From assembly GCF_003918875.1 (NCBI RefSeq), contig NW_025766957.1, positions 1,054,001 to 1,118,000 of the forward strand: a stretch of 64,000 nt of DNA, read 5' to 3'. Below, piece after piece: positions 14,554-60,160 of the stretch; the first letter of the stretch is position 1, and every line of letters starts with the position of its first letter. This DNA is from Haliotis rubra (taxonomy: Eukaryota). The notes below the pieces were generated by a model, which did no database searches, was not told the DNA's origin, and saw only the letters and a list, made by a program, of their open reading frames with translations. The translations under genes were made by a program, and so were the position numbers.

Positions 14554-14759
14554 GACCATATACCAACAAAATGCCACACTATCAAAAACTTGATCATCTT
14601 GTCAAAACTGAATGTTGCTAAAGCGAGGACCAGTCAAAAGGAGGAACCTAATCCCATCATCGCTGATTGGCGTGATGTAAAGAAAACGTGCTCAATTAGC
14701 TTGTAAAAGCCAAGATAAAATAATTTTGGACTTTCAAATAGATCAAAGAGTACTTCCAT

Positions 14760-14845
14760 CCAATAAGATTGAAGCTGATGAAGCCAGAGAAGTGAGAAGA
14801 CTATATAACTCTCTAGATGGAAAGTGAGCACATCTCACTCTTTGA
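14760..14845 (+). promoter_or_regulatory. Core promoter of TALE copy 1 (CCAAT, TATA, conserved start-site element)
   Basis: CCAAT at 14760, TATATAA at 14802, TGAGCACATCTCACTC at 14825-14840. The layout recurs in every unit and, inverted, at 18523-18601. Confidence 0.65.
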
Positions 14846-14905
14846 GTCTGTTGATACATAGTTACACTAAAACCTATTAGCAAGTGAACTGTGCTCAAAT
14901 ACAGG

Positions 14906-16196
14906 ATGGCTGACTTTGTAACTCCTGTTGATGGTGCCTTTGACGTCAGTTCCGGTATCGGTAAGTCCTTCCAGATAGTAATCTAGCATCCATTTGTAAG
15001 TGTGATCTCTCCATCGCAAATGCTTCAAATTCCCAGTGCCCTTGGCAAATCCATATCGTACCATTGATTACCTTGAATATTCATTTACAGAATACGTTAT
15101 TTTCTTTATTGTAGGAGCTCCTCAGCACACATCAACTCCTCTCCCCAAGAGACGTGCAGTGCCATCCCTGACAATACCAGTGCCTGACACAAACCATCAT
15201 GTGCCAACTCTCTCCAGCCTCCACCCGATGTCATCCCCGTCCTACCTCCACCCAACATGCATCTCCAGTCCCTACAGCTTCTTCCCTTCCTATTCTGCCA
15301 TGTACTACTCTCCCAGCTTCGGACCAGGTACCTGCACAGCTCCCAGCTATCCGCTACTACCGAGTCCATCATTCCTGCCACCAAGTCCATCCTACCTTTC
15401 ATCCCACCCGTTGGGGTATTCGACTGTACCAGGGAGTCCATCCTTCCTACCGGGTACGATTCCAAGCTCAAGTCTGCCCATCAAACCAGTATCGATTCCA
15501 ACCACCAGTGCTCTGACTACACCAACGCAGGGGCATTCAAAGTCTGTGGACATCAGCCCAGTCACAGAGACACGCCCGATTGACTTCGAATTGCCGTCTT
15601 GTTCCAGGCCCGATATTGGTAAAGCTGTTGATGACATCGTAGCGAAAACCCTTGGGGCAGATCTGGCAACAAAGAGTACCAACAACGACCGCCAGTCAGC
15701 TCTTGAGAAGAGACTCCAGTCACTCAAGTCAAGGTTCCCAACAGAGGTAAAGGAACTATCCAGCTTCCTTGCCTTCCATTCCTCATCTATTCAGAAGGAA
15801 CATCAACAGTGTCTACAAGATGGATTCTTCCCAACGGACTATCACAATTGGTTGACCACAAGATACAATGATCAACTGCACCTGGTGTTCACAAGCATCG
15901 AGAAAAGTGTGACCACCCTCGAGAACCAAGGCAAGATACTGGCCCGTCCTGCCAGCAGAAACCTCAGTCCTGAATCAATCGTCTTGATGGAGAAGTGGTA
16001 CCATGAACATCTCAACAACCCCTACCCCACTCAAACAGAAGCTGAAGACATGGCCAACAAGGGGGGAATTACCCTTTCTCAAGTACGAAAGTGGTTTTCC
16101 AACAAAAGACACAGGACCAGGAAACCCAGATCTGTCAAAGCTGTAGTTGCTGCCAAACAGTGTGAAGAGTTCCTGTCTGGGATATTTCAGATGTAA
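14906..16196 (+). CDS. Divergent TALE-class homeodomain protein (spiralian TALE/SPILE-like), copy 1, 378 aa, 2 exons
   Basis: Exon 1 14906-14960 (MADFVTPVDGAFDVSSGI, donor GTAAGT) and exon 2 15115-16196, with a phase-1 intron. Contains a Pro/Ser-rich region, a helical region (ALEKRLQSLKSRFPTEVKEL...IEKSVTTLEN) and the homeodomain LMEKWYHEHLNNPYPT...QVRKWFSNKRHR. AATAAA at 16413 and 16426. Confidence 0.9.
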
Positions 16197-17077
16197 AATG
16201 GGAACAGTTCTGTCACCTGAGTGATGCTAACTCGTTTAAGTAGTTTTGAAAGTGATATCAACTATGAATGTCTGTCCGAAGACAAAATTCCTTCATGCAT
16301 AGTGCTATATTCATCTTAGGACCTGTGATATCCATTGTTTTGTATATATGAATGTAAATTATGACCCGTGCTATCCATGGTTTTGTGGATGTCAATTGTT
16401 GCTTTGATCTGAAATAAAATATTGTAATAAACTATCATTCAAATGCCCGTCTTTTTAGCACGCACAGACTCTGTATTAACTCATCCTAAACATTAGCACA
16501 GAAGCGACTTCCTCACCAACATACACTCAATACAACTATCACACATTCCACATTACCATGAAACACCGAACACACTCAACATCCCTGTTTACACAACCAA
16601 CATAATGTAATATTATTATCACAACGGGATCAGTCAGTGTTACTTCCACACATTCATGTACAAAGTATTCAACATGCCATATTAACTATTACATCAAATA
16701 TATCACGCATTTAATAGTATTGTCAAAGTGCGATGGAGTGCACTTCACATTTAACTAGATCATTTTAATTTTTGCACCAAGCATCGTCTCTAACATTATA
16801 CTATAGTGTGCTCACACAAATTAAACGTTCATGACAACAATGCCACGTAACACTAAAAATGTATGCACAGTCTGGCCTGAAGGCTGCATTAGCAACACAT
16901 ATTTTGGCAAACTTAACCAGCTCCTTTTCTCGTTACAGAACGCTGAACACAACAGTCCCAGTTCCGTACCAGTTGTCACCTACTTGTAAATATCTGTGCA
17001 CGCAGTCGGTAACTCGCATCCTACCCTTAAACTATTTCACAACCACATCCACCCTAAAATAACATTTCAAGCCACAA

Positions 17078-17281
17078 GAAGACCACACCCGTGAAGATCC
17101 GGCTTAGAACTGGTGTATATCCAATCGTTCTTGTCGTTAGAGGCGACTAACGGGATCGGGTGGTCAGGCTCGCTGACTTGGTTGGCACATGTCATCCTCT
17201 CCCAATAGCGTAGATCGATGCTCATGATGTCGATCACTGGGTTTTCTGGTTCACACTCCATTATTTACATATAGCTGGAAA
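17078..17281 (+). mobile_element. SINE copy amplified with the macrosatellite unit
   Basis: ACCCGTGAAGATC...GTCGTTAGAGGCGACTAACGGGATCGGGTGGTCAGG, repeated at ~21781, 26486, 31192 and 35899. Mostly deleted after copy 6 (~40550). Confidence 0.85.
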
Positions 17282-18044
17282 TTTAACAACAACGAAACCA
17301 AACAAACACAAGAAGATCAGCATTGTATGTGATGATCATTATACCCCTGCCGAGGCCTAGTTGGATTATTGTAACAGTTGCTGAGAGGGGAATATTACAG
17401 TCACTGTCTATAAATCCATAATCACTGCTTTTGTATTATGATGTTACTTTTGATTTTGTGATGCCACATTGATATGTTTCTGGAGATTTGTATTGATTTG
17501 TAAAAACAGTTAATTTTAGAATATTAATTACATCACATTTCTTGGTTGTTGTCCTTTTGGTTTCACACTTAGTTATTTTACCAAGTAATTGCTGGTTAAT
17601 TTTTGTTTCAAATTTGGAATGAAGAATATAGGTAGATATCTCTCTTCAAAGCATCAGGACCATTTAATTTCTACAAATATATTCTCTCCAAACTACGAAA
17701 ATAGATTGGTAGGCATGTTTATATCACGTCGACTGCTGAATACAACAAAATTCCACATGGCAAGCTAGATATGTAGGAGTGTAAATTACTCAATCCATTT
17801 ACTTAATTGAAAATCTGCCATTTCCTTTAATTTGATATGAACTTTGGAAAGGATTTCAATCTCGTGACTCCTGTTTCGTTTGAATGTTAGGTCATGCAAA
17901 CTGGACAAATCAATGCTAGGATTCCATCAGTTTATTTAACGACGCAAAAGCACAAATGGTACAATTTCAAAACATGTTAAATAAACAACAAATAATAACA
18001 GGGATGGCACAATCCGATGCACTCATGTATGGGACAACAAACTG

Positions 18045-18449
18045 TCAAAGACTGACATCACAAACTGCAAATAACAAACATCCCTTTGGAAGAGACTTGG
18101 CACATTTTAGCAACGTTCGGGGAGATGAGTCAATATAGGCAGAGCCATGGTGCGGGTCTTGTTGGTTGGAGAGTGCTGGGTATCTCTGGACCAATGGAGT
18201 GGAGGTGTGCCGGGGAGTTCCTGAAACAAGAAAGGCGGTGTTAGAACATTCAGAGCGTTGTAGGATATTGTTAATGAAAGAATTTAGAATTACCACAACG
18301 TTTGTTACTTAATTAACCTGCAAATGTACTTCGTTTCTACCCAGCTTACCTAACGACAGAAGATTTCCCGGGCCCAGCAAGATGTTTCCTGGTGAAGATT
18401 GGGAGGTAGCAGTAGCAGCCTCACGGCATGGATGAGTATAGCAGGCCAT
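18045..18449 (-). CDS. Short spliced homeodomain-less paralog of the TALE gene (91 aa; may be a pseudogene), copy A
   Basis: Exon 1 18449-18350 (MACYTHPCREAATATSQSSPGNILLGPGNLLSL, donor GTAAGC) and exon 2 18220-18045 (acceptor TTGTTTCAG; GTPRHTSTPLVQRYPALS...DVSL*). Phase-1 intron as in the TALE gene. Minus-strand AATAAA at 17936-17931. Confidence 0.6.
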
Positions 18450-18522
18450 TTGTACTTGCTGAATCGCAGATGGATGTAAAACAGACTCCTTGTTAATGGT
18501 TCTGGGTAGCAGGAGACTCAAC

Positions 18523-18601
18523 GAGTGAGATGTGCTCAGTTCAATCAGTAGAGCTTTATATGCTACTCAGGTGTTTGACATCATCACCTTTGATTTATTG
18601 G
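18523..18601 (-). promoter_or_regulatory. Inverted homolog of the TALE core promoter, upstream of the short paralog
   Basis: Minus strand reads CCAAT (18601), TATAAA (18561) and TGAGCACATCTCACTC (18538-18523). The last is identical to 14825-14840. Confidence 0.65.
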
Positions 18602-19606
18602 CTGGAGATTCTCCTTAATCACTGGCTTCTATTTTCATTCTTTGATCTGTGGTTTCACTGGCTTGTGCTTTCAAGTGTTCTACAAACAGTACCAATTGAT
18701 TATTCTTCTCCACACTATGAAGCCAGTCAGCAGATTTGAATTCAGATTTGAGCCTTCGAGTGAAGGCGGATTAACGATGTTGTTTTAATGAACCATAGGT
18801 TAAAATGCATAATCTTCACCTGAAGCTGCTGATACCATTTAGATAGGTATATTATATTATATGTTCTGCTGCTATTCAAGTCCATTAGTAACCTAATTCT
18901 ATATGACAAAGTAAACTATGTAAGAACCTTTCAAATCTGAAAGAAATGGGAAACTAACTGGTAAACTTATCAGCTTGTATTGCGGCAGAAGCAAATCAAA
19001 TCGATCATTCTAAAATTTGGAAAAGACAATCGAGAAAACCCATTCAACAGATCAGTTTCCAGCAGAGAAAATCAAAGACAAATAAATCAATCGGAAAAGC
19101 CAGTCAATCGATTATGGTTGATTAACGCTATCAAACTCTAGCCAGTGAGGCCAGAGATGAAAGAGACCGTAACCAATCAAACACAAAGCGAGGTCCGTAT
19201 TAAAGAAGCCAGAGATCACCGAGAAACCTGAAACAACCTATCAATCACTTGTGATCGTACAAGGCCACATTATCAAAACTTGATCATCTTGTGTCATCAC
19301 TGAATGTTGCCAAAGCACGGACCAGTCAAAAGGCCAAACCTAATGCCATCATGCAGATTGAGGTTGTGTTGTACAGAAAACGTGCTCAATTAGCTTGTGA
19401 AAGCCAAGATCAAAGAATGTTAGCTTTTAAATAGAAGTCATTGATCAAAGACTACTTCCATCCAATAAGATTGAAGCTGGTGAAGCCAGAGAGTGAGGAG
19501 AGTATATATATCTCCAGATAGAAGGTGAGCACATCTCACGCTTTGAGTCTGTTGATACATAGTTACACGAGAACCTATTAGCAAGTGAACTGTGCTCAAA
19601 TACAGG

Positions 19607-20897
19607 ATGGCTGACTTTGTAACTCCTGTTGATGGTGCCTTTGACGTCAGTTCCGGTATCGGTAAGTCCTTCCAGATAGTAATCTAGCATCCATTTGTAA
19701 GTGTGATCTCTCCATCGCAAATGCTTCAAATTCCCAGTGCCCTTGGCAAATCCATATCGTACCATTGATTACCTTGAATATTCATTTACAGAATACGTTA
19801 TTTTCTTTATTGTAGGAGCTCCTCAGCACACATCAACTCCTCTCCCCAAGAGACGTGCAGTGCCATCCCTGACAATACCAGTGCCTGACACAAACCATCA
19901 TGTGCCAACTCTCTCCAGCCTCCACCCGATGTCATCCCCGTCCTACCTCCACCCAACATGCATCTCCAGTCCCTACAGCTTCTTCCCTTCCTATTCTGCC
20001 ATGTACTACTCTCCCAGCTTCGGACCAGGTACCTGCACAGCTCCCAGCTATCCGCTACTACCGAGTCCATCATTCCTGCCACCAAGTCCATCCTACCTTT
20101 CATCCCACCCGTTGGGGTATTCGACTGTACCAGGGAGTCCATCCTTCCTACCGGGTACGATTCCAAGCTCAAGTCTGCCCATCAAACCAGTATCGATTCC
20201 AACCACCAGTGCTCTGACTACACCAACGCAGGGGCATTCAAAGTCTGTGGACATCAGCCCAGTCACAGAGACACGCCCGATTGACTTCGAATTGCCGTCT
20301 TGTTCCAGGCCCGATATTGGTAAAGCTGTTGATGACATCGTAGCGAAAACCCTTGGGGCAGATCTGGCAACAAAGAGTACCAACAACGACCGCCAGTCAG
20401 CTCTTGAGAAGAGACTCCAGTCACTCAAGTCAAGGTTCCCAACAGAGGTAAAGGAACTATCCAGCTTCCTTGCCTTCCATTCCTCATCTATTCAGAAGGA
20501 ACATCAACAGTGTCTACAAGATGGATTCTTCCCAACGGACTATCACAATTGGTTGACCACAAGATACAATGATCAACTGCACCTGGTGTTCACAAGCATC
20601 GAGAAAAGTGTGACCACCCTCGAGAACCAAGGCAAGATACTGGCCCGTCCTGCCAGCAGAAACCTCAGTCCTGAATCAATCGTCTTGATGGAGAAGTGGT
20701 ACCATGAACATCTCAACAACCCCTACCCCACTCAAACAGAAGCTGAAGACATGGCCAACAAGGGGGGAATTACCCTTTCTCAAGTACGAAAGTGGTTTTC
20801 CAACAAAAGACACAGGACCAGGAAACCCAGATCTGTCAAAGCTGTAGTTGCTGCCAAACAGTGTGAAGAGTTCCTGTCTGGGATATTTCAGATGTAA
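19607..20897 (+). CDS. TALE homeodomain protein, copy 2
   Basis: Exons 19607-19661 and 19816-20897. Protein identical to copy 1. Confidence 0.9.
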
Positions 20898-22747
20898 AAT
20901 GGGAACAGTTCTGTCACCTGAGTGATGCTAACGCGTTTAAGTAGTTGTGAAAGTGATATCAACTATGAATGTCTGTCCGAAGACAAAATTCCTTCATGCA
21001 TAGTGCTATATTCATCTTAGGATCTGTGATATCCATTGTTTTGTATATATGAATGTAAATTATGACCCGTGCTATCCATGGTTTTGTGGATGTCAATTGT
21101 TGCTTTGATCTGAAATAAAATATTGTAATAAACTATCATTCAAATGCCCGTCTTTTTTAGCACGCACAGACTCTGTATTAACTCATCCTAAACATTAGCA
21201 CAGAAGCGACTTCCTCACCAACATACACTCAATACAACTATCACACATTCCACATTACCATGAAACACCGAACACACTCAACATCCCTGTTTACACAACC
21301 AACATAATGTAATATTATTATCACAACGGGATCAGTCAGTGTTACTTCCACACATTCATGTACAAAGTATTCAACATGCCATATTAACTATTACATCAAA
21401 TATATCACGCATTTAATAGTATTGTCAAAGTGCGATGGAGTGCACTTCACATTTAACTAGATCATTTTAATTTTTTGCACCAAGCATCGTCTCTAACATT
21501 ATACTATAGTGTGCTCACACAAATTTAAACGTTCATGACAACAATGCCACGTAACACTAAAAATGTATGCACAGTCTGGCCTGAAGGCTGCATTAGCAAC
21601 ACATATTTTGGCAAACTTAACCAGCTCCTTTTCTCGTTACAGAACGCTGAACACAACAGTCCCAGTTCCGTACCAGTTGTCACCTACTTGTAAATATCTG
21701 TGCACGCAGTCGGTAACTCGCATCCTACCCTTAAACTATTTCACAACCACATCCACCCTAAAATAACATTTCAAGCCACAAGAAGACCACACCCGTGAAG
21801 ATCGGGCTTAGAACTGGTGTATATCCAATCGTTCTTGTCGTTAGAGGCGACTAACGGGATCGGGTGGTCAGGCTCGCTGACTTGGTTGGCACATGTCATC
21901 CTCCCAAATAGCGTAGATCGATGCTCATGATGTCGATCACTGGGTTTTCTGGTTCACACTCCATTATTTACATATAGCTGGAAATTTAACAACAACGAAA
22001 CCAAACAAACACAAGAAGATCAGCATTGTATGTGATGATCATTATACCCTGCCGAGGCCTAGTTGGATTATTGTAACAGTTGCTGAGAGGGGAATATTAC
22101 CGTCACTGTCTATAAATCCATAATCACTGCTTTTGTATTATGATGTTACTTTTGATTTTGTGATGCCACATTGATATGTTTCTGGAGATTTGTATTGATT
22201 TGTAAAAACAGTTAATTTTAGAATATTAATTACATCACATTTCTTGGTTGTTGTCCTTTTGGTTTCACACTTAGTTATTTTACCAAGTAATTGCTGGTTA
22301 ATTTTTTGTTTCAAATTTGGAATGAAGAATATAGGTAGATATCTCTCTTCAAAGCATCAGGACCATTTAATTTCTACAAATATATTCTCTCCAAACTACG
22401 AAAATAGATTGGTAGGCATGTTTATATCACGTCGACTGCTGAATACAACAAAATTCCACATGGCAAGCTAGATATGTAGGAGTGTAAATTACTCAATCCA
22501 TTTACTTAATTGAAAATCTGCCATTTCCTTTAATTTGATATGAACTTTGGAAAGGATTTCAATCTCGTGACTCCTGTTTCGTTTGAATGTTAGGTCATGC
22601 AAACTGGACAAATCAATGCTAGGATTCCATCAGTTTATTTAACGACGCAAAAGCACAAATGGTACAATTTCAAAACATGTTAAATAAACAACAAATAATA
22701 ACAGGGATGGCACAATCCGATGCACTCATGTATGGGACAACAAACTG

Positions 22748-23152
22748 TCAAAGACTGACATCACAAACTGCAAATAACAAACATCCCTTTGGAAGAGACT
22801 TGGCACATTTTAGCAACGTTCGGGGAGATGAGTCAATATAGGCAGAGCCATGGTGCGGGTCTTGTTGGCTGGAGAGTGCTGGGTATCTCTGGACCAATGG
22901 AGTGGAGGTGTGCCGGGGAGTTCCTGAAACAAGAAAGGCGGTGTTAGAACATTCAGAGCGTTGTAGGATATTGTTAATGAAAGAATTTAGAATTACCACA
23001 ACGTTTGTTACTTAATTAACCTGCAAATGTACTTCGTTTCTACCCAGCTTACCTAACGACAGAAGATTTCCCGGGCCCAGCAAGATGTTTCCTGGTGAAG
23101 ATTGGGAGGTAGCAGTAGCAGCCTCACGGCATGGATGAGTATAGCAGGCCAT
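22748..23152 (-). CDS. Short homeodomain-less paralog, copy B
   Basis: Same two-exon structure as 18045-18449. Confidence 0.55.
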
Positions 23153-24309
23153 TTGTACTTGCTGAATCGCAGATGGATGTAAAACAGACTCCTTGTTAAT
23201 GGTTCTGGGTAGCAGGAGACTCAACGAGTGAGATGTGCTCAGTTCAATCAGTAGAGCTTTATATGCTACTCAGGTGTTTGACATCATCACCTTTGATTTA
23301 TTGGCTGGAGATTCTCCTTAATCACTGGCTTCTATTTTCATTCTTTGATCTGTGGTTTCACTGGCTAGTGCTTTCAAGTGTTCTACAAACAGTACCAATT
23401 GACTATTCTTCTCCACACTATGAAGCCAGTCAGCAGATTTGAATTCAGATTTGAGCCTTCGAGTGAAGGCGGATTAACGGTGTTGTTTTAATGAACCATA
23501 GGTTAAAATGCATAATCTTCACCTGAAGCTGCTGATACCATTTAGGTAGGTATATTATATTATATGTTTTGCTGCTATTCAAGTCCATTAGTAACCTAAT
23601 TCTATATGACAAAGTAAACTATGTAAGAACCTTTCAAATCTGAAAGAAATGGGAAACTAACTGGTAAACTTATCAGCTTGTATTGCGGCAGAAGCAAATC
23701 AAATCGATCATTCTAAAATTTGGAAAAGACAATGGAGAAAACCCATTCAACAGATCAGTTTCCAGCAGAGAAAATCAAAGACAAATAAATCAATCGGAAA
23801 AGCCAGTCAATCGATTATGGTTGATTAACGCTATCAAACACTAGCCAGTGAGGCCAGAGATGAAAGAGACCGTAACCAATCAAACACAAAGCGAGGTCCG
23901 TATTAAAGAAGCCAGAGATCACCGAGAAACCTGAAACAACCTATCAATCACTTGTGATCGTACAAGGCCACACTATCAAAACTTGATCATCTTGTGTCAT
24001 CACTGAATGTTGCCAAAGCACGGACCAGTCAAAAGGCCAAACCTAATGCCATCATGCAGATTGAGGTTGTGTTGTACAGAAAACGTGCTCAATTAGCTTG
24101 TGAAAGCCAAGATCAAAGAATGTTAGCTTTTAAATCGAAGTCATTGATCAAAGACTACTTCCATCCAATAAGATTGAAGCTGGTGAAGCCAGAGAGTGAG
24201 GAGAGTATATATATCTCCAGATAGAAGGTGAGCACATCTCACGCTTTGAGTCTGTTGATACATAGTTACACGAGAACCTATTAGCAAGTGAACTGTGCTC
24301 AAATACAGG

Positions 24310-25600
24310 ATGGCTGACTTTGTAACTCCTGTTGATGGTGCCTTTGACGTCAGTTCCGGTATCGGTAAGTCCTTCCAGATAGTAATCTAGCATCCATTTG
24401 TAAGTGTGATCTCTCCATCGCAAATGCTTCAAATTCCCAGTGCCCTTGGCAAATCCATATCGTACCATTGATTACCTTGAATATTCATTTACAGAATACG
24501 TTATTTTCTTTATTGTAGGAGCTCCTCAGCACACATCAACTCCTCTCCCCAAGAGACGTGCAGTGCCATCCCTGACAATACCAGTGCCTGACACAAACCA
24601 TCATGTGCCAACTCTCTCCAGCCTCCACCCGATGTCATCCCCGTCCTACCTCCACCCAACATGCATCTCCAGTCCCTACAGCTTCTTCCCTTCCTATTCT
24701 GCCATGTACTACTCTCCCAGCTTCGGACCAGGTACCTGCACAGCTCCCAGCTATCCGCTACTACCGAGTCCATCATTCCTGCCACCAAGTCCATCCTACC
24801 TTTCATCCCACCCGTTGGGGTATTCGACTGTACCAGGGAGTCCATCCTTCCTACCGGGTACGATTCCAAGCTCAAGTCTGCCCATCAAACCAGTATCGAT
24901 TCCAACCACCAGTGCTCTGACTACACCAACGCAGGGGCATTCAAAGTCTGTGGACATCAGCCCAGTCACAGAGACACGCCCGATTGACTTCGAATTGCCG
25001 TCTTGTTCCAGGCCCGATATTGGTAAAGCTGTTGATGACATCGTAGCGAAAACCCTTGGGGCAGATCTGGCAACAAAGAGTACCAACAACGACCGCCAGT
25101 CAGCTCTTGAGAAGAGACTCCAGTCACTCAAGTCAAGGTTCCCAACAGAGGTAAAGGAACTATCCAGCTTCCTTGCCTTCCATTCCTCATCTATTCAGAA
25201 GGAACATCAACAGTGTCTACAAGATGGATTCTTCCCAACGGACTATCACAATTGGTTGACCACAAGATACAATGATCAACTGCACCTGGTGTTCACAAGC
25301 ATCGAGAAAAGTGTGACCACCCTCGAGAACCAAGGCAAGATACTGGCCCGTCCTGCCAGCAGAAACCTCAGTCCTGAATCAATCGTCGTGATGGAGAAGT
25401 GGTACCACGAACATCTCAACAACCCCTACCCCACTCAAACAGAAGCTGAAGACATGGCCAACAAGGGGGGAATTACCCTTTCTCAAGTACGAAAGTGGTT
25501 TTCCAACAAAAGACACAGGACCAGGAAACCCAGATCTGTCAAAGCTGTAGTTGCTGCCAAACAGTGTGAAGAGTTCCTGTCTGGGATATTTCAGATGTAA
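24310..25600 (+). CDS. TALE homeodomain protein, copy 3
   Basis: Exons 24310-24364 and 24519-25600. One L>V change in helix 1 (ESIVVMEK). Confidence 0.9.
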
Positions 25601-32162: not shown

Positions 32163-32566
32163 TCAAAGACTGACATCACAAACTGCAAATAACAAACATC
32201 CCTTTGGAAGAGACTTGGCACATTTTAGCAACGTTCGGGGAGATGAGTCAATATAGGCAGAGCCATGGTGCGGGTCTTGTTGGCTGGAGAGTGCTGGGTA
32301 TCTCTGGACCAATGGAGTGGAGGTGTGCCGGGGAGTTCCTGAAACAAGAAAGGCGGTGTTAGAACATTCAGAGCGTTGTAGGATATTGTTAATGAAAGAA
32401 TTTAGAATTACCACAACGTTTGTTACTTAATTAACCTGCAAATGTACTTCGTTTCTACCCAGCTTACCTAACGACAGAAGATTTCCGGGCCCAGCAAGAT
32501 GTTTCCTGGTGAAGATTGGGAGGTAGCAGTAGCAGCCTCACGGCATGGATGAGTATAGCAGGCCAT
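32163..32566 (-). pseudogene. Short homeodomain-less paralog, copy D, 1-nt deletion in exon 1
   Basis: ATTTCCGGG at ~32481 versus ATTTCCCGGG in the other copies. This is a homopolymer indel and may be an error. Confidence 0.5.
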
Positions 32567-33724
32567 TTGTACTTGCTGAATCGCAGATGGATGTAAAACA
32601 GACTCCCTTGTTAATGGTTCTGGGTAGCAGGAGACTCAACGAGTGAGATGTGCTCAGTTCAATCAGTAGAGCTTTATATGCTACTCAGGTGTTTGACATC
32701 ATCACCTTTGATTTATTGGCTGGAGATTCTCCTTAATCACTGGCTTCTATTTTCATTCTTTGATCTGTGGTTTCACTGGCTAGTGCTTTCAAGTGTTCTA
32801 CAAACAGTACCAATTGACTATTCTTCTCCACACTATGAAGCCAGTCAGCAGATTTGAATTCAGATTTGAGCCTTCGAGTGAAGGCGGATTAACGGTGTTG
32901 TTTTAATGAACCATAGGTTAAAATGCATAATCTTCACCTGAAGCTGCTGATACCATTTAGGTAGGTATATTATATTATATGTTTTGCTGCTATTCAAGTC
33001 CATTAGTAACCTAATTCTATATGACAAAGTAAACTATGTAAGAACCTTTCAAATCTGAAAGAAATGGGAAACTAACTGGTAAACTTATCAGCTTGTATTG
33101 CGGCAGAAGCAAATCAAATCGATCATTCTAAAATTTGGAAAAGACAATGGAGAAAACCCATTCAACAGATCAGTTTCCAGCAGAGAAAATCAAAGACAAA
33201 TAAATCAATCGGAAAAGCCAGTCAATCGATTATGGTTGATTAACGCTATCAAACACTAGCCAGTGAGGCCAGAGATGAAAGAGACCGTAACCAATCAAAC
33301 ACAAAGCGAGGTCCGTATTAAAGAAGCCAGAGATCACCGAGAAACCTGAAACAACCTATCAATCACTTGTGATCGTACAAGGCCACACTATCAAAACTTG
33401 ATCATCTTGTGTCATCACTGAATGTTGCCAAAGCACGGACCAGTCAAAAGGCCAAACCTAATGCCATCATGCAGATTGAGGTTGTGTTGTACAGAAAACG
33501 TGCTCAATTAGCTTGTGAAAGCCAAGATCAAAGAATGTTAGCTTTTAAATCGAAGTCATTGATCAAAGACTACTTCCATCCAATAAGATTGAAGCTGGTG
33601 AAGCCAGAGAGTGAGGAGAGTATATATATCTCCAGATAGAAGGTGAGCACATCTCACGCTTTGAGTCTGTTGATACATAGTTACACGAGAACCTATTAGC
33701 AAGTGAACTGTGCTCAAATACAGG

Positions 33725-35016
33725 ATGGCTGACTTTGTAACTCCTGTTGATGGTGCCTTTGACGTCAGTTCCGGTATCGGTAAGTCCTTCCAGATAGTAA
33801 TCTAGCATCCATTTGTAAGTGTGATCTCTCCATCGCAAATGCTTCAAATTCCCAGTGCCCTTGGCAAATCCATATCGTACCATTGATTACCTTGAATATT
33901 CATTTACAGAATACGTTATTTTCTTTATTGTAGGAGCTCCTCAGCACACATCAACTCCTCTCCCCAAGAGACGTGCAGTGCCATCCCTGACAATACCAGT
34001 GCCTGACACAAACCATCATGTGCCAACTCTCTCCAGCCTCCACCCGATGTCATCCCCGTCCTACCTCCACCCAACATGCATCTCCAGTCCCTACAGCTTC
34101 TTCCCTTCCTATTCTGCCATGTACTACTCTCCCAGCTTCGGACCAGGTACCTGCACAGCTCCCAGCTATCCGCTACTACCGAGTCCATCATTCCTGCCAC
34201 CAAGTCCATCCTACCTTTCATCCCACCCGTTGGGGTATTCGACTGTACCAGGGAGTCCATCCTTCCTACCGGGTACGATTCCAAGCTCAAGTCTGCCCAT
34301 CAAACCAGTATCGATTCCAACCACCAGTGCTCTGACTACACCAACGCAGGGGCATTCAAAGTCTGTGGACATCAGCCCAGTCACAGAGACACGCCCGATT
34401 GACTTCGAATTGCCGTCTTGTTCCAGGCCCGATATTGGTAAAGCTGTTGATGACATCGTAGCGAAAACCCTTGGGGCAGATCTGGCAACAAAGAGTACCA
34501 ACAACGACCGCCAGTCAGCTCTTGAGAAGAGACTCCAGTCACTCAAGTCAAGGTTCCCAACAGAGGTAAAGGAACTATCCAGCTTCCTTGCCTTCCATTC
34601 CTCATCTATTCAGAAGGAACATCAACAGTGTCTACAAGATGGATTCTTCCCAACGGACTATCACAATTGGTTGACCACAAGATACAATGATCAACTGCAC
34701 CTGGTGTTCACAAGCATCGAGAAAAGTGTGACCACCCTCGAGAACCAAGGCAAGATACTGGCCCGTCCTGCCAGCAGAAACCTCAGTCCTGAATCAGTCG
34801 TCTTGATGGAGAAGTGGTACCATGAACATCTCAACAACCCCTACCCCACTCAAACAGAAGCTGAAGACATGGCCAACAAGGGGGGCAATTACCCTTTCTC
34901 AAGTACGAAAGTGGTTTTCCAACAAAAGACACAGGACCAGGAAACCCAGATCTGTCAAAGCTGTAGTTGCTGCCAAACAGTGTGAAGAGTTCCTGTCTGG
35001 GATATTTCAGATGTAA
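33725..35016 (+). pseudogene. TALE homeodomain gene copy 5, +1 frameshift before helix 3 (pseudogene or assembly error)
   Basis: Exons 33725-33779 and 33934-35016. AAGGGGGGCAATT at ~34878-34890 has one extra base, moving WFSNKR to another frame (ORF 34822-35016). Confidence 0.7.
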
Positions 35017-36865
35017 AATGGGAACAGTTCTGTCACCTGAGTGATGCTAACGCGTTTAAGTAGTTGTGAAAGTGATATCAACTATGAATGTCTGTCCGAA
35101 GACAAAATTCCTTCATGCATAGTGCTATATTCATCTTAGGATCTGTGATATCCATTGTTTTGTATATATGAATGTAAATTATGACCCGTGCTATCCATGG
35201 TTTTGTGGATGTGAATTGTTGCTTTGATCTGAAATAAAATATTGTAATAAACTATCATTCAAATGCCCGTCTTTTTTAGCACGCACAGACTCTGTATTAA
35301 CTCATCCTAAACATTAGCACAGAAGCGACTTCCTCACCAACATACACTCAATACAACTATCACACATTCCACATTACCATGAAACACCGAACACACTCAA
35401 CATCCCTGTTTACACAACCAACATAATGTAATATTATTATCACAACGGGATCAGTCAGTGTTACTTCCACACATTCATGTACAAAGTATTCAACATGCCA
35501 TATTAACTATTACATCAAATATATCACGCATTTAATAGTATTGTCAAAGTGCGATGGAGTGCACTTCACATTTAACTAGATCATTTTTATCTTTTTCACC
35601 AAGCATCGTCTCTAACATTATACTATAGTGTGCTCACACAAATTAAACGTTCATGACAACAATGCCACGTAACACTAAAAATGTATGCACAGTCTGGCCT
35701 GAAGGCTGCATTAGCAACACATATTTTGGCAAACTTAACCAGCCCCTTTTCTCGTTACAGAACGCTGAACACAACAGTCCCAGTTCCGTACCAGTTGTCA
35801 CCTACTTGTAAATATCTGTGCACGCCGTCGGTAATTCGCATCCTACCCTTAAACTATTTCACAACCACATCCACCCTAAAATAACATCTCAAGCCACAAG
35901 AAGACCACACCCGTGAAGATCGGGCTTAGAACTGGTGTATATCCAATCGTTCTTGTCGTTAGAGGCGACTAACGGGATCGGGTGGTCAGGCTCGCTGACT
36001 TGGTTGGCACATGTCATCCTCTCCCAATAGCGTAGATCGATGCTCATGATGTCGATCACTGGGTTTTCTGGTTCACACTCCATTATTTACATATAGCTGG
36101 AAATTTAACAACAACGAAACCAAACAAACACAAGAAGATCAGCATTGTATGTGATGATCATTATACCCTGCCGAGGCCTAGTTGGATTATTGTAACAGTT
36201 GCTGAGAGGGGAATATTACCGTCACTGTCTATAAATCCATAATCACTGCTTTTGTATTATGATGTTACTTTTGATTTTGTGATGCCACATTGATATGTTT
36301 CTGGAGATTTGTATTGATTTGTAAAAACAGTTAATTTTAGAATATTAATTACATCACATTTCTTGGTTGTTGTCCTTTTGGTTTCACACTTAGTTATTTT
36401 ACCAAGTAATTGCTGGTTAATTTTTTGTTTCAAATTTGGAATGAAGAATATAGGTAGATATCTCTCTTCAAAGCATCAGGACCATTTAATTTCAACAAAT
36501 ATATTCTCTCCAAAATACGAAAATAGATTGGTAGGCATGTTTATATCACGTCGACTGCTGAATACAACAAAATTCCACATGGCAAGCTAGATATGTAGGA
36601 GTGTAAATTACTCAATCCATTTACCTAATTGAAAATCTGCCATTTCCTTTAATTTGATATGAACTTTGGAAAGGATTTCAATCTCGTGACTCCTGTTTCG
36701 TTTGAATGTTAGGTCATGCAAACTGGACAAATCAATGCTAGATTCCATCAGTTTATTTAACGACGCAAAAGCACAAATGGTACAATTTCAAAACATGTTA
36801 AATAAACAACAAATAATAACAGGGATGGCACAATCCGATGCACTCATGTATGGGACAACAAACTG

Positions 36866-37270
36866 TCAAAGACTGACATCACAAACTGCAAATAACAAAC
36901 ATCCCTTTGGAAGAGACTTGGCACATTTTAGCAACGTTCGGGGAGATGAGTCAATATAGGCAGAGCCATGGTGCGGGTCTTGTTGGCTTGAGAGTGCTGG
37001 GTATCTCTGGACCAATGGAGTGGAGGTGTGCCGGGGAGTTCCTGAAACAAGAAAGGCGGTGTTAGAACATTCAGAGCGTTGTAGGATATTGTTAATGAAA
37101 GAATTTAGAATTACCACAACGTTTGTTACTTAATTAACCTGCAAATGTACTTCGTTTCTACCCAGCTTACCTAACGACAGAAGATTTCCCGGGCCCAGCA
37201 AGATGTTTCCTGGTGAAGATTGGGAGGTAGCAGTAGCAGCCTCACGGCATGGATGAGTATAGCAGGCCAT
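36866..37270 (-). CDS. Short homeodomain-less paralog, copy E
   Basis: Same two-exon structure, intact frame. Confidence 0.55.
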
Positions 37271-38458
37271 TTGTACTTGCAGAATCGCAGATGGATGTAA
37301 AACAGACCCCTTGTTAATGGTTCTGGGTAGCAGGAGACTCAACGAGTGAGATGTGCTCAGTTCAATCAGTAGAGCTTTATATGCTACTCAGGTGTTTGGT
37401 ATGATCACGTTTGATTTATTGGCTGGAGATTCTCCTTAATCACTGGCTTTTATTTTCATTCTTTGATCTGTGGTTTCACTGGCTAGTGCTTTCAAGTGTT
37501 CTACAAACAGTACCAATAGACTGTTCTTCTCCACACCTCTTGATAGGTGGACGCTTTGATAACATTCAAGAATGACCGGGATGTTTTTATAATTGAGCCT
37601 CTCAAGTGAAGGCGGATTAACGGTGTTGTTTTAATGAACCATAGGTTAAAATGCATAATCTTCACCTGAAGCTGCTGATACCATTTAGGTAGGTATATCA
37701 CATCATATGTTTTGCTACTACTCAAGTCCATAAGTAGCTTAATTCTATATGACAAAGTAACTACATGTATGTAAGAACCTTTCAAATCTGAAAGAAATGG
37801 GAAACTAACTGGTAAATGTATCAGCTTGTATTGCGGCAGAAGCAAATCAAATCGATCATTCTAAAATTTGGAAAAGACAATGGAGAAAACCCATTCAACA
37901 GATCAGTTTCCAGCAGAGAAAATCAAAGACAAATAAATCAATCGGAAAAGCCAGTCAATCGATTATGGTTGATTAACGCTATCAAACACTAGCCAGTGAG
38001 GCCAGAGATGAAAGAGACCGTAACCAATCAAACACAAAGCGAGGTCCGTATTAAAGAAGCCAGAGATCACCGAGAAACCTGAAACAACCTATCAATCACT
38101 TGTGATCGTACAAGGCCACACTATCAAAACTTGATCATCTTGTGTCATCACTGAATGTTGCCAAAGCACGGACCAATCAAAAGGCCAAACCTAATGCCAT
38201 CATGCAGATTGAGGTTGTGTTGTACAGAAAACGTGCTTAATTAGCTTGTGAAAGCCAACATCGAAGAATGTTGAACTTTTAAATAGAAGGTATTGATCAA
38301 AAACTACTTCCATCCAATAAGATTGAAGCTGGTGAAGCCAGAGAGTGAGAAGAGTATATATATCTCCAGATAGAAGGTGAGCACATCTCACGCTTTGAGT
38401 CTGATGATACATAGTTACACTAAAACCTATTAGCAAGTGAACTGTGCTCAAATACAGG

Positions 38459-39753
38459 ATGGCTGACTTTGTAACTCCTGTTGATGATGCCTTTGACGTC
38501 AGTTCCGGTATCGGTAAGTCCTTCCAGATAGTAATCTAGCACCCATTTGTAACTGTGTAAATGCTTCAAATTCACAGTGCCTTTGGTAAATCAATAACCG
38601 TATTCGTACCATTGATTACCTTGAACGTTCATTTACAGAATACGTTATTTTCTTTATTGTAGGAGCTCCTCAGCACACATCAACTCCTCTCCCCAAGAGA
38701 CGTGCAGTGCCATCCCTGACAATACCAGTGCCTGACACAAACCATCATGTGCCAACTCTCTCCAGCCTCCACCCGATGTCATCCCCGTCCTACCTCCACC
38801 CAACATGCATCTCCAGTCCCTACAGCTTCTTCCCTTCCTATTCTGCCACGTACTACACTCCTAGCTTCGGACCAGGTACCTGCACAGCTCCCAGCTATCC
38901 GCTACTACCGAGTCCATCATTCCTGCCACCAAGTCCATCCTACCTTTCATCCCACCCGTTGGGGTGTTCGACTGTACCAGGGAGTCCATCCTTCCTACCG
39001 GGGACGATTTCAAGTCCATCAAGCTCAAGTCTGTCCATCAAACCAGAATCGATTCCAACCACCAGTGCTCTAACTACACCAACGCAGGGGCATTCAAAGT
39101 CTGTGGACATCAGCCCAGTCACAGAGACACGCCCGATTGACTTCAAATTGCCGTCTTGTTCCAGGCCCGATATTGGTAAAGCTGTTGATGACATCGTAGC
39201 GAAAACCCTTGGGGCAGATCTGGCAACAAAGAGTACCAACAACGACCGCCAGTCAGCTCTTGAGAAGAGACTCCAGTCACTCAAGTCAAGGTTCCCAACA
39301 GAGGTAAAGGAACTATCCAGCTTCCTTGCCTTCCATTCCTCATCTATTCAGAAGGAACATCAACAGTGTCTACAAGATGGATTCTTCCCAACGGACTATC
39401 ACAATTGGCTGACCACAAGATACAATGATCAACTGCACCTGGTGTTCACAAGCATCGAGAAAAGTGTGACCACCCTCGAGAACCAAGGCAAGATACTGGC
39501 CCGTCCTGCCAGCAGAAACCTCAGTCCTGAATCAATCGTCTTGATGGAGAAGTGGTACCATGAACATCTCAACAACCCCTACCCCACTCAAACAGAAGCT
39601 GAAGACATGGCCAACAAGGGGGCAATTACCCTTTCTCAAGTACGAAAGTGGTTTTCCAACAAAAGACACAGGACCAGGAATCCCAGATCTGTCAAAGCTG
39701 TAGTTGCTGCCAAACAGTGTGAAGAGTTCCTGTCTGGGATATTTCAGATGTAA
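38459..39753 (+). CDS. TALE homeodomain protein, copy 6 (diverged), 381 aa
   Basis: Exons 38459-38513 and 38663-39753. Has a 9-nt insertion (ISSPSSSSL) and several substitutions, including KGG>KGA and RKP>RNP. Confidence 0.88.
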
Positions 39754-41401
39754 AATGGGACCAGTTCTGTCACCTGAGTGATGCTAACGCGTTTAAGTAG
39801 TTTTGAAAGTGATATCAACTATGAATGTCTGTCCGTAGACTAAAGTCCTTCATGCATAGTGCTATATTCATCTTAGGATCTGTGATATCCATTGTTTTGT
39901 ATATATGAATGTAAATTATGACCCGTGCTATCCATTGTTTTGTGGATGTCAGTTGTTGCTTTGATCTGAAATAAAATATTGTAATAAACTATCATTCAAA
40001 TGCCCGTCGTTTTTTTAGCACGCACAGACTCTGTATTAACTCATCCTAAACATTAGCACAGAAGCGACTTCCTCACCAACATACACTCAATACAACTATC
40101 ACACATTCCACATTACCATGAAACACCGAACACACTCAACATCCCTGTTTACACAACCAACATAATGTAATATTATTATCACAACGGGATCAGTCAGTGT
40201 TACTTCCACACATTCATGTACAAAGTATTCAACATGCCATATTAACTATTACATCAAATATATCACGCATTTAATAGTATTGTCAAAGTGCGATGGAGTG
40301 CACTTCACATTTAACTAGATCATTTTTATCTGTTTCACCAAGCATCGTCTCTAACATTATACTATAGTGTGCTCACACAAATTAAACGTTCATGACAACA
40401 ATGCCACGTAACACTAAAAATGTATGCACAGTCTGGCCTGAAGGCTGCATTAGCAACACATATTTTGGCAAACTTAACCTGATCCTTTTCTCGTTACAGA
40501 AAACTGATCACACCCAGTTCCGTACCAATTGTCACCTACTTGAAAATATCTGTATTTACAAATATCTGGAATTTTCACAACAACGAAACCACACAAACAC
40601 AAGAAGTTCAGCATTGTATGTGATGATCATTATACCCTGCCGAGGCCTAGTCCGATTATTGTAACTGTTGCTGAGAGGGGAATATTACCGTCACTGTCTA
40701 TAAGTCAATAATCACTGCTTTTGTATTATGATGTTACTTTTGATTTGTATTGCCACATTGATATGTTTCTGGAGATTTGTATTGATTTGTAAAAACAGTT
40801 AATTATAGAATATTAATTACATCACATTTCATGGTTGTTGCCCTTTTGGTTTCACACCTATTTGTTTTACCTTCTAATTGCTTGTTAATGTTTAGTTTCA
40901 ACTTTGGTATGAACAATATAGGTAGATATCTGTCTTCAAAGCATCAGGACCATTTGTTTTCAACAAATATATTCTCTCCAAAATAGTTTGGTAGGCATGT
41001 TTATATCACGTCGACTGTTGAATACAACAAAATTCTACATGGCAAGCTAGATATGTATGAGTGTAAATTACTCAATCCATTTACTTAATTGAAAATCTGC
41101 CATTTCCTTTAAATTGATATGAACTTTGGAAAGGATTTCAATCTCGTGACTCCTGTTTCGTTTGAATGTTAGGTCATGCAAACTGGACAAATCAATGCTA
41201 GGATTCCATCAGTTTATTTAACGACACAAAAGCACAAATGGTACAATTTCAAAACATGTTAAATAAACAACAAATAATAACAGGGATGGCACAATCCGAT
41301 GCATTCATGTATGTGACAACAAACTGACAAAGACTGACATCACAAACTGCAAATAACAAACATCGCTTTGGAAGAGACATGGCACATTTTAGCAGCGTTC
41401 G

Positions 41402-41530
41402 GGGAGATGTATTACAGAAAATACCAGATTACTTTATGATTTAATGAATCATTGTAAAGTTAATAAGATATCTGGCCTATTAGTCACCGTTGACTTCGAG
41501 AAAGCGTTTGATACCATTGAATGGGATTCA
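41402..41530 (+). mobile_element. L1/Tx1-clade LINE reverse transcriptase fragment at the right edge of the array
   Basis: Translates as GRCITENTRLLYDLMNHCKVNKISGLLVTVDFEKAFDTIEWD, matching the L1/Tx1 RT pattern GRxIxxNxR...DFEKAFDxxxW. Confidence 0.8.
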
Positions 41531-46100: not shown

Positions 46101-46162
46101 ATTTAACACACATCATTTTCATCTTTAGATTGGTCATGAAGTTAACCGACTGCATGTTGGTT

Positions 46163-46248: not shown

Positions 46249-46289
46249 GTTGGTTACAGCCATCAGTGCATCATAAAGTCTTATCTGTT

Positions 46290-46445: not shown

Positions 46446-46474
46446 TATTAAATTTTTACCAACCAACACCCCAG

Positions 46475-46984: not shown

Positions 46985-60160
<13,176 letters not shown>

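What the first reader, a model, noticed from the sequence alone, without database searches (positions are those of the whole stretch)
14572..41409. Homeobox macrosatellite: six near-identical TALE genes in a 4.7-kb tandem array, an architecture like D4Z4/DUX4 in a probable mollusc
Seen: ~5.7 head-to-tail units, each with a compact 2-exon TALE gene, CCAAT/TATA promoter and poly(A) signals. Copies 1, 2 and 4 encode identical proteins and the spacers are near-identical. Known: spiralian-specific TALE genes (SPILE and related clades) act in cleavage-stage embryos, and mammalian DUX4/Dux genome-activation homeobox genes sit in homogenised macrosatellites. Inference: this is a dosage-amplified, copy-number-variable early-embryo transcription factor array that converged on the DUX4 arrangement.
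Basis: partly seen in the sequence, partly recalled or inferred. Interest (0 to 1): 0.88.

Follow-up and report, generated by a model that had tools for sequence, protein, structure and literature searches.

The report
Abalone SPILE homeobox gene tandem array
Six head-to-tail copies of a mollusc-specific homeobox gene (SPILE A/C type) sit in a 27-kb array in the blacklip abalone and are kept almost identical by ongoing copying between units. This kind of array is already described in limpets, chitons and another abalone, so it is a good example rather than a new thing.

Summary
Window 14570-41409 is a tandem array with a 4.70-4.74 kb period: five full units, one truncated unit, and a 249-bp diverged remnant on the left. 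Each unit carries a two-exon gene with a TALE homeodomain. Copies 1, 2 and 4 encode identical 378-aa proteins, copy 3 differs by L309V, and copy 6 is a 381-aa variant. Copy 5 has a 1-bp insertion inside the homeobox.

The genome is Haliotis rubra. The five intact genes equal existing RefSeq "uncharacterized protein" entries. The protein has a PADRE domain followed by a TALE homeodomain. Near-identical homeodomains from H. discus hannai were classed as SPILE A/C-clade by Morino et al. 2021, who also reported tandem near-identical SPILE arrays in Lottia and a chiton.

H. asinina, H. cracherodii, H. rufescens and one unnamed Haliotis carry the same array. Copies cluster by species, and between-species dN/dS is 0.27-0.35. 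This indicates concerted evolution acting on functional genes.

The DUX4/D4Z4 comparison is only a loose analogy, because most defining D4Z4 features were tested and not met. Early-embryo expression, dosage function and within-species copy-number variation remain untested. Verdict: a new member of a known kind, of moderate interest.

The parts
14570..14818 (+). Left-edge remnant. It is a diverged copy (83%) of unit positions 4444-4702 and serves as the upstream/promoter region of gene copy 1.
   Evidence: blastn. In the promoter alignment, copy 1 shares states with H. asinina and the unnamed species at several positions where the inner copies share derived changes.
14820..37239 (+). Homogenised core of the array: units 1-4 plus the first ~3600 bp of unit 5. 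Pairwise substitution differences are 0.15-0.72%.
37240..41409 (+). Older right-edge block: the tail of unit 5 (4.3% different plus indels) and the truncated unit 6 (2.9% different, with a ~264-bp deletion). It ends sharply at 41409/41410.
14906..16196 (+). Gene copy 1 (exon 1 14906-14960, exon 2 15115-16196). 378 aa, identical to P0001.
19607..20897 (+). Gene copy 2 (exon 1 19607-19661, intron 19662-19815, exon 2 19816-20897). 378 aa, identical to P0001. The PADRE domain is encoded at about 20388-20633 and the TALE homeodomain at about 20643-20831.
24310..25600 (+). Gene copy 3. 378 aa with L309V, equal to P0008 (XP_046573841).
29017..30307 (+). Gene copy 4. 378 aa, identical to P0001.
33725..35016 (+). 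Gene copy 5. One extra base at 34886, after a G6 run, shifts the frame inside the homeobox, and the shifted frame stops at 34985. This is either a pseudogene or a homopolymer assembly error.
   Evidence: No matching RefSeq protein was found.
38459..39753 (+). Gene copy 6. 381 aa, equal to P0009 (XP_046573844). It is the most diverged intact copy.
19462..19539 (+). Core promoter of copy 2: CCAAT at 19462-19466, a TATA-like run at 19503-19511, and a 16-nt block (GGTGAGCACATCTCAC, 19524-19539) that is invariant in five Haliotis species.
   Evidence: This shows motif presence and conservation only; no transcription data were available.
21114..21132 (+). Two AATAAA poly(A) signals, 217-235 nt after the stop codon of copy 2. 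They are repeated in every unit.
21781..21972 (+). Short dispersed repeat (SINE-like) carried as a passenger in each unit. Other copies lie at 5625-5714, 12931-13070, 44894-45085, 45498-45916, 49564-49696, 52615-52739 and 56400-56504.
   Evidence: In H. asinina only the edge units keep it.

Best explanation
This is a tandem array of SPILE A/C-clade genes in the blacklip abalone Haliotis rubra. These are spiralian-specific TALE homeobox transcription factors that carry a PADRE domain.

Each 4.7-kb unit is a self-contained transcription unit. It has a conserved CCAAT/TATA promoter, a 55-nt first coding exon, one 154-nt intron, a second exon, and its own poly(A) signals. The encoded protein has four parts: a fast-evolving Ser/Pro/Tyr-rich N-terminal half, a roughly 85-aa helical PADRE domain, a TALE homeodomain, and a short conserved C-terminal helix.

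The array sits at the same locus throughout the genus. It is kept uniform by unequal crossing-over and/or gene conversion, so inner units are nearly identical and the edge units lag behind. The protein itself is under purifying selection.

By inference from limpet, mussel, oyster and annelid relatives, the genes are most likely switched on in cleavage-stage embryos as blastomere-fate regulators. Several short, one-intron copies would raise output during short cell cycles. That last step is inferred, not shown.
For: Identity and class:
- The gene models equal RefSeq H. rubra proteins.
- Homeobox_KN scores 1.7e-12, and Exd/PBX1 homeodomains are the best solved matches.
- A profile of PADRE plus homeodomain finds molluscan proteins that match across both domains in one stretch. 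One of them is in the cluster of Mytilus coruscus CAC5380989. That protein aligns to ours over residues 211-367 at 33% identity, E 5e-31, and is labelled SPILE A/C-clade in PMC8524836 supplementary Table S1.
- H. discus hannai homeodomains HDSC00981CG00050, CG00080 and _298461, labelled SPILE A/C in the same paper, differ from ours at 7 of 63 positions (read by eye).
- A 37-sequence alignment shows the PADRE consensus. AlphaFold models it as long helices with pLDDT 85-97.

Functional genes:
- Between-species dN/dS is 0.27-0.35 overall, 0.12-0.22 for PADRE plus homeodomain, and about 0.5 for the N-terminal half.
- The promoter, the splice donor and the exon 1 peptide are conserved in five species.

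Array ancestry and concerted evolution:
- H. asinina has 8 full and at least 2 truncated units, H. cracherodii has 5 plus an outlying paralogue, and H. rufescens has 3. A collapsed unit is seen in a Logan assembly.
- Spacers are alignable between H. rubra and H. asinina, and the right flank is syntenic.
- Copies cluster by species, with support 0.73-1.0.
- The dS values measured within arrays are at most 0.02, against 0.18-0.49 between the more distant species.
- There is an edge gradient of divergence.
- In H. asinina the inner units share deletions that the edge units lack.

Expected function:
- SPILE genes specify quartet fates in the limpet (PMC8524836 Background).
- Novel oyster homeobox genes peak either early or late in development (PMC5322547).
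- More than ten unclassified TALE genes rise at genome activation in Owenia (PMC12550047).
Against: - No expression data for any Haliotis copy were found.
- Oyster novel homeobox genes peak either early or late, so an early role is not guaranteed.
The clade assignment rests on the published labels of near-identical orthologues and on the shared PADRE architecture.
- The homeodomain C-terminus (NKRHRTRKPRS) departs from the usual A/C consensus (NKRNRSNNTR), so this is a divergent member.
- Independent recent amplification in each species would give the same tree as concerted evolution. Only the shared locus, shared spacer and edge-unit patterns favour an old array.
- Copy number comes from a single assembly, and one copy is frameshifted.
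Confidence: 0.75

Rival explanations
1. True DUX4-like macrosatellite. On this reading the array is a copy-number-variable, epigenetically silenced repeat. Its genes fire in a brief burst at zygotic genome activation and act as pioneer activators, so the arrangement has converged on mammalian D4Z4/Dux.
For: The units are kb-sized and homogenised, spacers included. Each unit carries a homeobox ORF. Copy number differs among species, from 3 to about 10. The array is CpG-depleted (observed/expected 0.53, promoter 0.30) compared with its flanks (0.84-0.93), which fits past germline methylation. Spiralian TALE genes rise at genome activation in an annelid.
Against: Most defining D4Z4 features were tested and not met. 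There is an intron, and each unit has its own promoter and poly(A) signals. There is one TALE homeodomain rather than two PRD-class homeodomains. GC is 41%. Only six copies are assembled. No expression, methylation or population data exist. Known SPILE function is lineage-specific fate specification, not global genome activation.
Confidence: 0.2
2. Neutral gene-family churn. On this reading, tandem duplication and homogenisation are by-products of unequal crossing-over at a repeat-prone locus. One copy would do the job and copy number has no dosage meaning.
For: Copy number varies freely among species. Truncated, deleted and frameshifted copies are tolerated: copy 5 here, a 43-aa deletion and 5'-truncated units in H. 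asinina, and a 311-aa copy in H. rufescens. Barton-Owen et al. describe non-canonical TALE genes as undergoing rapid, relatively unconstrained duplication and loss.
Against: All four named Haliotis genome assemblies keep at least three copies, and at least two intact ones, at the same locus, across divergences up to dS about 0.5. Promoters are conserved in every copy. Related SPILE A/C genes are independently multi-copy in Lottia and a chiton. These points argue for, but do not prove, selection for more than one copy.
Confidence: 0.25
3. Assembly artefact. On this reading the copy number is inflated or mis-stated by the assembler working on a repeat, and the real locus has one or two genes.
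For: Hybrid long-read assemblies can mis-size near-identical tandem repeats. The copy 5 frameshift lies next to a homopolymer, a typical error site.
Against: Every unit has private substitutions and indels, and there is an ordered edge-to-core divergence gradient. There are no Ns in the window. Four independently assembled Haliotis genomes show the same tandem arrangement. A short-read Logan contig of 4187 nt covers almost exactly one unit, as expected when a real tandem repeat collapses.
Confidence: 0.05

Closest known systems
Tandem SPILE A/C-clade genes of other molluscs (Lottia gigantea LgTALEHD21, 22 and 29-34; chiton Acanthopleura granulata; Haliotis discus hannai scaffold HDSC00981) - Morino et al. 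2017/2021, PMC8524836
   Same: Same gene family: a PADRE domain plus a TALE homeodomain. Same arrangement: several nearly identical homeoboxes in tandem on one scaffold. The H. discus hannai genes are the direct counterparts, with homeodomains 56/63 identical.
   Different: The paper reports only homeodomain identities and scaffold positions from a fragmented draft. New here are the complete unit anatomy, spacer homogenisation at 99.5-99.9%, the core/edge gradient, presence across five Haliotis species with concerted evolution, and the conserved promoter.
D4Z4 / DUX4 macrosatellite (human 4q35) and the mouse Dux array
   Same: A tandem array of kb-sized, highly homogenised units, each carrying an ORF for a homeodomain factor. 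The gene family's relatives act in the earliest embryo.
   Different: DUX4 is an intronless retrogene with two PRD-class homeodomains. It sits in a GC-rich 3.3-kb unit present in tens to more than a hundred copies, and a stabilising poly(A) signal follows only the last unit. Here there is one TALE homeodomain, an intron, a promoter and poly(A) signals in every unit, 41% GC and six copies. The D4Z4 features listed are from general knowledge, not from a tool.
Canonical TALE families (PBX/Exd, MEIS, PKNOX, TGIF, IRX, MKX)
   Same: A three-residue loop extension (…NPYP…) between helices 1 and 2. The homeodomain is closest to Exd/PBX1 among solved structures (E about 1e-13; TM by target 0.74-0.92).
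   Different: None of 37 PADRE proteins shows a Pfam match other than the homeodomain-type families, and no PBC or MEIS-type N-terminal family appears in the listing (top 25 of 49 families). The PADRE domain alone finds no PBX in fold search. Relatives that share PADRE are all molluscan, among those that could be named.
Other multicopy early-embryo homeobox clusters (mouse Obox, Rhox; eutherian ETCHbox genes)
   Same: Lineage-specific, rapidly evolving homeobox genes multiplied in tandem. PMC11196112, listed, links Obox4 to genome activation.
   Different: Those are PRD-class genes in mammals and their copies are more diverged from one another. No functional data exist for the abalone genes.

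Membership tests
TALE-class homeobox genes | Homeodomain with a three-amino-acid loop extension between helix 1 and helix 2 (63-aa homeodomain) | tested here: met
   Pfam Homeobox_KN 1.7e-12 across the full 40-position model. The …HLNNPYPT… loop is present. The best solved matches are Exd/PBX1, then MEIS, PKNOX and TGIF.
SPILE A/C-clade (Morino et al.) | PADRE domain (about 87-90 aa conserved region) directly upstream of the homeodomain | tested here: met
   Residues 211-290 align with the PADRE region of M. coruscus CAC5380989, a published A/C member, at 33% identity over PADRE plus homeodomain, E 5e-31. The consensus is shared with 33 other molluscan proteins. The definitions are in PMC5322547 and PMC8524836.
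SPILE A/C-clade (Morino et al.) | Homeodomain falls inside the A/C clade in a phylogeny | tested here: inconclusive
The H. discus hannai homeodomains labelled A/C-clade in the paper's tables and alignment file are 56/63 identical to ours. The assignment is borrowed, not replicated.
SPILE genes in general | Zygotic expression in cleavage-stage blastomeres, staggered along the animal-vegetal axis | not testable with these tools
   No abalone expression data could be reached. No spliced transcript contig of the gene appears in the protein collection.
D4Z4/DUX4-type macrosatellite | Tandem array of kb-sized, near-identical units, each holding a complete homeobox ORF | tested here: met
D4Z4/DUX4-type macrosatellite | Intronless (retrogene) ORF with a double PRD-class homeodomain | tested here: not met
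   A 154-nt intron is present, and there is a single TALE homeodomain.
D4Z4/DUX4-type macrosatellite | GC-rich unit, tens or more copies, and a usable poly(A) signal only beyond the last unit | tested here: not met
   GC is 0.41, six copies are assembled, and AATAAA signals lie in every unit.
D4Z4/DUX4-type macrosatellite | Copy-number polymorphism among individuals and repeat-induced silencing in somatic tissue | not testable with these tools
   Only indirect evidence exists: copy number differs among species, and CpG observed/expected is 0.53 against 0.84-0.93 in the flanks.
   No such Pfam domain was found in this protein or, within the listing, in 36 relatives. Full-length relatives are found only in Haliotis, and PADRE relatives only in molluscs.

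The most novel reading that the evidence does not exclude
The Haliotis SPILE array is a real dosage device. On this reading, an old, genus-wide macrosatellite has its copy number and homogeneity selected so that a short, one-intron gene can deliver a burst of transcription factor during the first cleavage cycles. It is methylated or silenced outside that window. This would be a functional, independently evolved counterpart of the mammalian DUX4/Dux arrays in a spiral-cleaving animal.
Probability: 0.25. Interest if true: 0.65.

Novelty: new member of a known kind. Interest (0 to 1): 0.35.

Why it matters
SPILE genes are the best candidates for the lineage-specific regulators behind spiral-cleavage fate maps. 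Why they so often occur as near-identical tandem copies is not understood. This locus is a clean, fully assembled example, with defined units, promoters and edges and with counterparts in at least four other abalone genomes. That makes it a practical system for three questions. Is copy number selected? How fast does concerted evolution run (dS at most 0.02 within arrays, against 0.04 between sister species)? Does multi-copy architecture serve early-embryo dosage? Abalone are farmed and spawn on demand, so the embryo experiments are feasible. As it stands the finding adds detail to a known phenomenon rather than revealing a new one.

Tried and rejected
1. PADRE as a diverged PBC (PBX) domain. 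Foldseek with the PADRE-plus-homeodomain model put PBX/Exd entries on top, with alignments reaching into PBC-B. TM was only 0.26. None of 37 members showed a PBC match in the Pfam listing. The PADRE-only model hit nothing better than generic helical hairpins at E above 0.4. The PADRE profile found no PDB sequence relative. I dropped the idea.

2. The head-to-head homeodomain-less paralogue noted by the scan (s1-352096). The only protein similarity is 23 residues at E 0.4. There is no significant inverted nucleotide match to the gene. tblastx against H. asinina and the unnamed species shows equal conservation in all three frames, with stops and a frame change. The segment is absent from the H. 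cracherodii spacer and occurs there once, outside the array. I read it as conserved non-coding spacer or a decayed relic, not a gene.

3. A second SPILE gene in the window, as on the H. discus hannai scaffold. A six-frame motif scan found only the six array homeodomains.

4. A transposon explanation. The unit contains no transposase or reverse-transcriptase ORF. It carries only a roughly 190-bp dispersed repeat as a passenger.

5. A search for expression or any earlier description of these loci by LOC or gene id, and for abalone early-embryo homeobox papers, found nothing specific.

6. ARAGORN found no tRNA-derived element.


Full report
**1. The observation**

A 20-mer offset histogram of the window has its strongest peaks at 4700, 9410, 14110 and 18820 bp. 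The repeat finder returns six-copy families spaced 4701-4739 bp apart. I used the stretch 19521-24223 as the reference unit and ran blastn against the window.
- A 249-bp remnant lies at 14570-14818. It is 83% identical to the last 259 bp of the unit.
- Five complete units follow at 14820-19520, 19521-24223, 24224-28930, 28931-33638 and 33639-38372, at 98.1-99.5% identity.
- The final unit, 38373-41409, lacks about 264 bp internally and stops at unit position 3310.

The window has no Ns. Tandem Repeats Finder did not list the array because its period limit is 500.

**2. The genes**

Each unit holds one long + strand ORF ending in a homeodomain. Pfam gives Homeobox_KN at 1.7e-12 and Homeodomain at 1.1e-08. 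An ATG 209 bp upstream of the exon 2 acceptor, a GTAAGT donor and a TTGTAG acceptor give a two-exon model: 55 nt, a 154-nt intron, then 1082 nt.

The translations are not merely similar to RefSeq Haliotis rubra proteins but equal to them.
- Copies 1, 2 and 4 equal P0001 (XP_046573839/840/843, 378 aa).
- Copy 3 equals P0008 (L309V).
- Copy 6 equals P0009 (381 aa).
- Copy 5 has one extra base at 34886 beside a G6 run. This shifts the frame between homeodomain helices 2 and 3, and the copy has no RefSeq protein. It is either a young pseudogene or a homopolymer error.

So the window is H. rubra. The genes are already annotated as "uncharacterized protein LOC1242818xx", and five of the six copies are intact.

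**3. The unit outside the coding sequence**

I aligned the 330 bp upstream of the ATG from H. rubra copies 1, 2 and 6, H. asinina, H. cracherodii, H. rufescens and an unnamed Haliotis. Four features are conserved: the CCAAT box, the TATA position, the splice donor, and a 16-nt block (GGTGAGCACATCTCAC, 19524-19539) that is invariant in all of them. These are motif and conservation data, not evidence of transcription.

The spacer carries a roughly 190-bp dispersed repeat (unit positions 2261-2452), which has other copies elsewhere in the window. The unit is CpG-poor: observed/expected is 0.53 overall, 0.42 in exon 2 and 0.30 in the promoter. The flanks are at 0.84-0.93, and the GpC control is about equal in unit and flanks. 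This fits historical germline methylation, but that is only an inference.

**4. What kind of homeobox gene this is**

Full-length relatives exist only in Haliotis. The next hit, a Ruditapes protein, matches only the homeodomain. I searched 1.84 billion representatives with a profile of the C-terminal 214 residues. It found many proteins that match from about 90 residues upstream of the homeodomain through to its end in a single stretch. The ones that carry names are bivalve "uncharacterized" proteins from Mactra, Dreissena, Saccostrea and Mytilus.

One cluster contains Mytilus coruscus CAC5380989.1. It aligns with the abalone protein over residues 211-367 at 33% identity, E 5e-31. Morino et al. 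2021 (PMC8524836) label it "SPILE A/C-clade" in supplementary Table S1.

The same supplement lists three H. discus hannai homeodomains on scaffold HDSC00981 (CG00050, CG00080 and 298461-298625), also labelled SPILE A/C-clade. They differ from the H. rubra homeodomain at 7 of 63 positions, counted by eye.

The conserved upstream region fits the PADRE domain. Paps et al. [quoted passage not shown] Morino et al. use it as the signature of the A/C clade. A 37-sequence alignment shows the shared consensus.

AlphaFold models PADRE as long antiparallel helices with pLDDT 85-97, followed by a standard homeodomain and a C-terminal helix. Among solved structures the homeodomain is closest to Exd/PBX1.

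PADRE itself has no detectable relative. No PBC or MEIS-type family appears in the Pfam listing for any of the 37 proteins, there is no PDB sequence hit, and fold search returns only generic helical hairpins.

**5. Already known for this family**

PMC8524836 states the following.
- Eight Lottia A/C-type homeodomains are "nearly identical and located tandemly".
- Seven chiton A/C genes lie on one scaffold with nearly identical homeoboxes.
- In abalone eight A/C genes were found, with four "closely located" on each of two scaffolds.

No paper was found that mentions these loci by id or compares SPILE arrays with DUX4.

**6. The array in other abalone**

| Species | What was found |
|---|---|
| H. 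asinina (three overlapping loci merged to 50,197 nt) | Eight full-length copies at 4.12-4.18 kb spacing, one with a 43-aa in-frame deletion, plus at least two 5'-truncated units at the upstream end |
| H. cracherodii | Five copies, plus a more diverged paralogue about 13 kb downstream |
| H. rufescens | Three copies, the third shortened |
| Unnamed Haliotis (Logan short-read contig, 4187 nt) | Almost exactly one unit, as a collapsed tandem repeat would give; it contains the intron, so it is genomic |

Between H. rubra and H. asinina the spacer aligns as well as the gene does, at 75-82%. The right flank is collinear: rubra 41855-48457 matches asinina 42231-50197. The last unit breaks off in roughly the same part of the unit in both species. 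The locus and the tandem state therefore predate the split of these species.

**7. Concerted evolution and selection**

In a tree of exon 2 sequences all copies group by species, with support 0.73-1.0. This holds even for the close pair H. cracherodii and H. rufescens. The synonymous divergences measured within arrays are at most 0.016. Between species they are 0.038 (cracherodii-rufescens), 0.175 (rubra-asinina) and 0.49 (rubra-cracherodii).

Within H. rubra the divergence is graded.
- Units 2-4 differ by 0.15-0.34%.
- Unit 1 differs by 0.4-0.7%.
- Unit 5 matches the core for its first 3600 bp (0.4%) and then differs by 4.3%, with indels.
- Unit 6 differs by 2.9%.
- The left remnant differs by 17%.

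In H. asinina the inner units share deletions of the dispersed-repeat segment, which the first and last units retain. Uniform cores with lagging edges are the expected signature of homogenisation by unequal exchange or gene conversion.

Between-species dN/dS is 0.27-0.35 for the whole protein, 0.12-0.22 for PADRE plus homeodomain, and about 0.5 for the Ser/Pro/Tyr-rich N-terminal half. The genes are constrained, not decaying.

**8. How it most likely works**

Shown:
- Each unit is a complete gene for a PADRE-TALE transcription factor.
- The array is old, homogenised and under purifying selection.

Inferred from relatives:
- SPILE genes are expressed in staggered domains along the animal-vegetal axis and specify quartet fates in the limpet.
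- Novel oyster homeobox genes peak in early or late development.
- More than ten unclassified TALE genes are up-regulated at genome activation in Owenia.

A short, one-intron gene present in several identical copies suits rapid output in short cleavage cycles. I put about 50-60% on an early-embryo role and about 25% on copy number being selected for dosage in a DUX4-like way.

**9. The DUX4 comparison**

The two share kb-sized homogenised units, each with a homeobox ORF. They differ in several ways. Here there is an intron, a promoter and poly(A) signals in every unit, a single TALE rather than a double PRD homeodomain, 41% GC, and six copies. Polymorphism and silencing could not be tested. 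The array may work like a multicopy early-embryo gene cluster, but it is not a D4Z4-type element, and "convergence" remains a hypothesis.

**10. Verdict**

This is a new, well-resolved member of a known kind (tandem SPILE A/C arrays). The new details are genus-wide concerted evolution, a core/edge structure and a conserved promoter. Interest is 0.35.

The scan's separate note of a head-to-head paralogue in each unit was not borne out. Another note (s1-339658) reports a second homogenised homeobox array in this genome, which suggests that such arrays are not rare in abalone.

Noticed in passing
window 22380-23450 (unit positions about 2860-3925), minus strand; repeated in every unit: This spacer segment is as conserved between H. 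rubra and H. asinina (82%) as the gene itself. It holds an 83-aa minus-strand ORF with a weak 23-residue likeness to the gene's N-terminus (E 0.4). Conservation is equal in all three frames and stops are present. In H. cracherodii and H. rufescens the segment occurs once, outside the array and in the opposite orientation. It could be a conserved regulatory element or a decayed relic, and it does not look like a coding gene.
   Followed up: partly
window 19524-19539 and the same place in each unit: A 16-nt block, GGTGAGCACATCTCAC (a GTGAG…CTCAC inverted repeat), lies just downstream of the TATA-like run and is invariant in five Haliotis species, although neighbouring bases vary. It is a candidate initiator or factor-binding site.
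   Followed up: partly
L001:1175-7610 (H. asinina, upstream end of its array): Two or three shortened units are joined at unit positions about 3777 and 570, so they lack the promoter, exon 1 and the start of exon 2. The RefSeq 425-aa model P0002 appears to be stitched together from them.
   Followed up: partly
L007:10001-11367 (H. cracherodii): A more diverged paralogue (P0006, 394 aa; its H. rufescens counterpart P0019 is annotated 'mucin-2-like') lies about 13 kb downstream of the main array. No counterpart lies in the 22 kb downstream of the H. rubra array in this window.
   Followed up: partly
window 53758-55056 and 10198-10885: Two minisatellites: a 33-bp unit with about 40 copies (81% matches) and a 34/102-bp unit with about 15 copies.
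   Followed up: no
window 56993-58623, + strand: Overlapping ORFs of 183-319 aa. One contains a motif that reads like a reverse-transcriptase core (…[18 protein letters not shown]), but there was no Pfam hit at E 0.01. This is probably a decayed retroelement.
   Followed up: partly
window 50065-50403, + strand: An exon-like ORF with a weak TPR-type Pfam match (PF23914, E 3.7e-4, below its cut-off). It may be an exon of a TPR-repeat gene downstream of the array.
   Followed up: partly
window 5625-5714, 12931-13070, 21781-21972 (and each unit), 44894-45085, 45498-45916, 49564-49696, 52615-52739, 56400-56504: A dispersed repeat of roughly 130-190 bp (81-89% identical copies, both orientations). 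It is SINE-like, but ARAGORN finds no tRNA-like part.
   Followed up: partly
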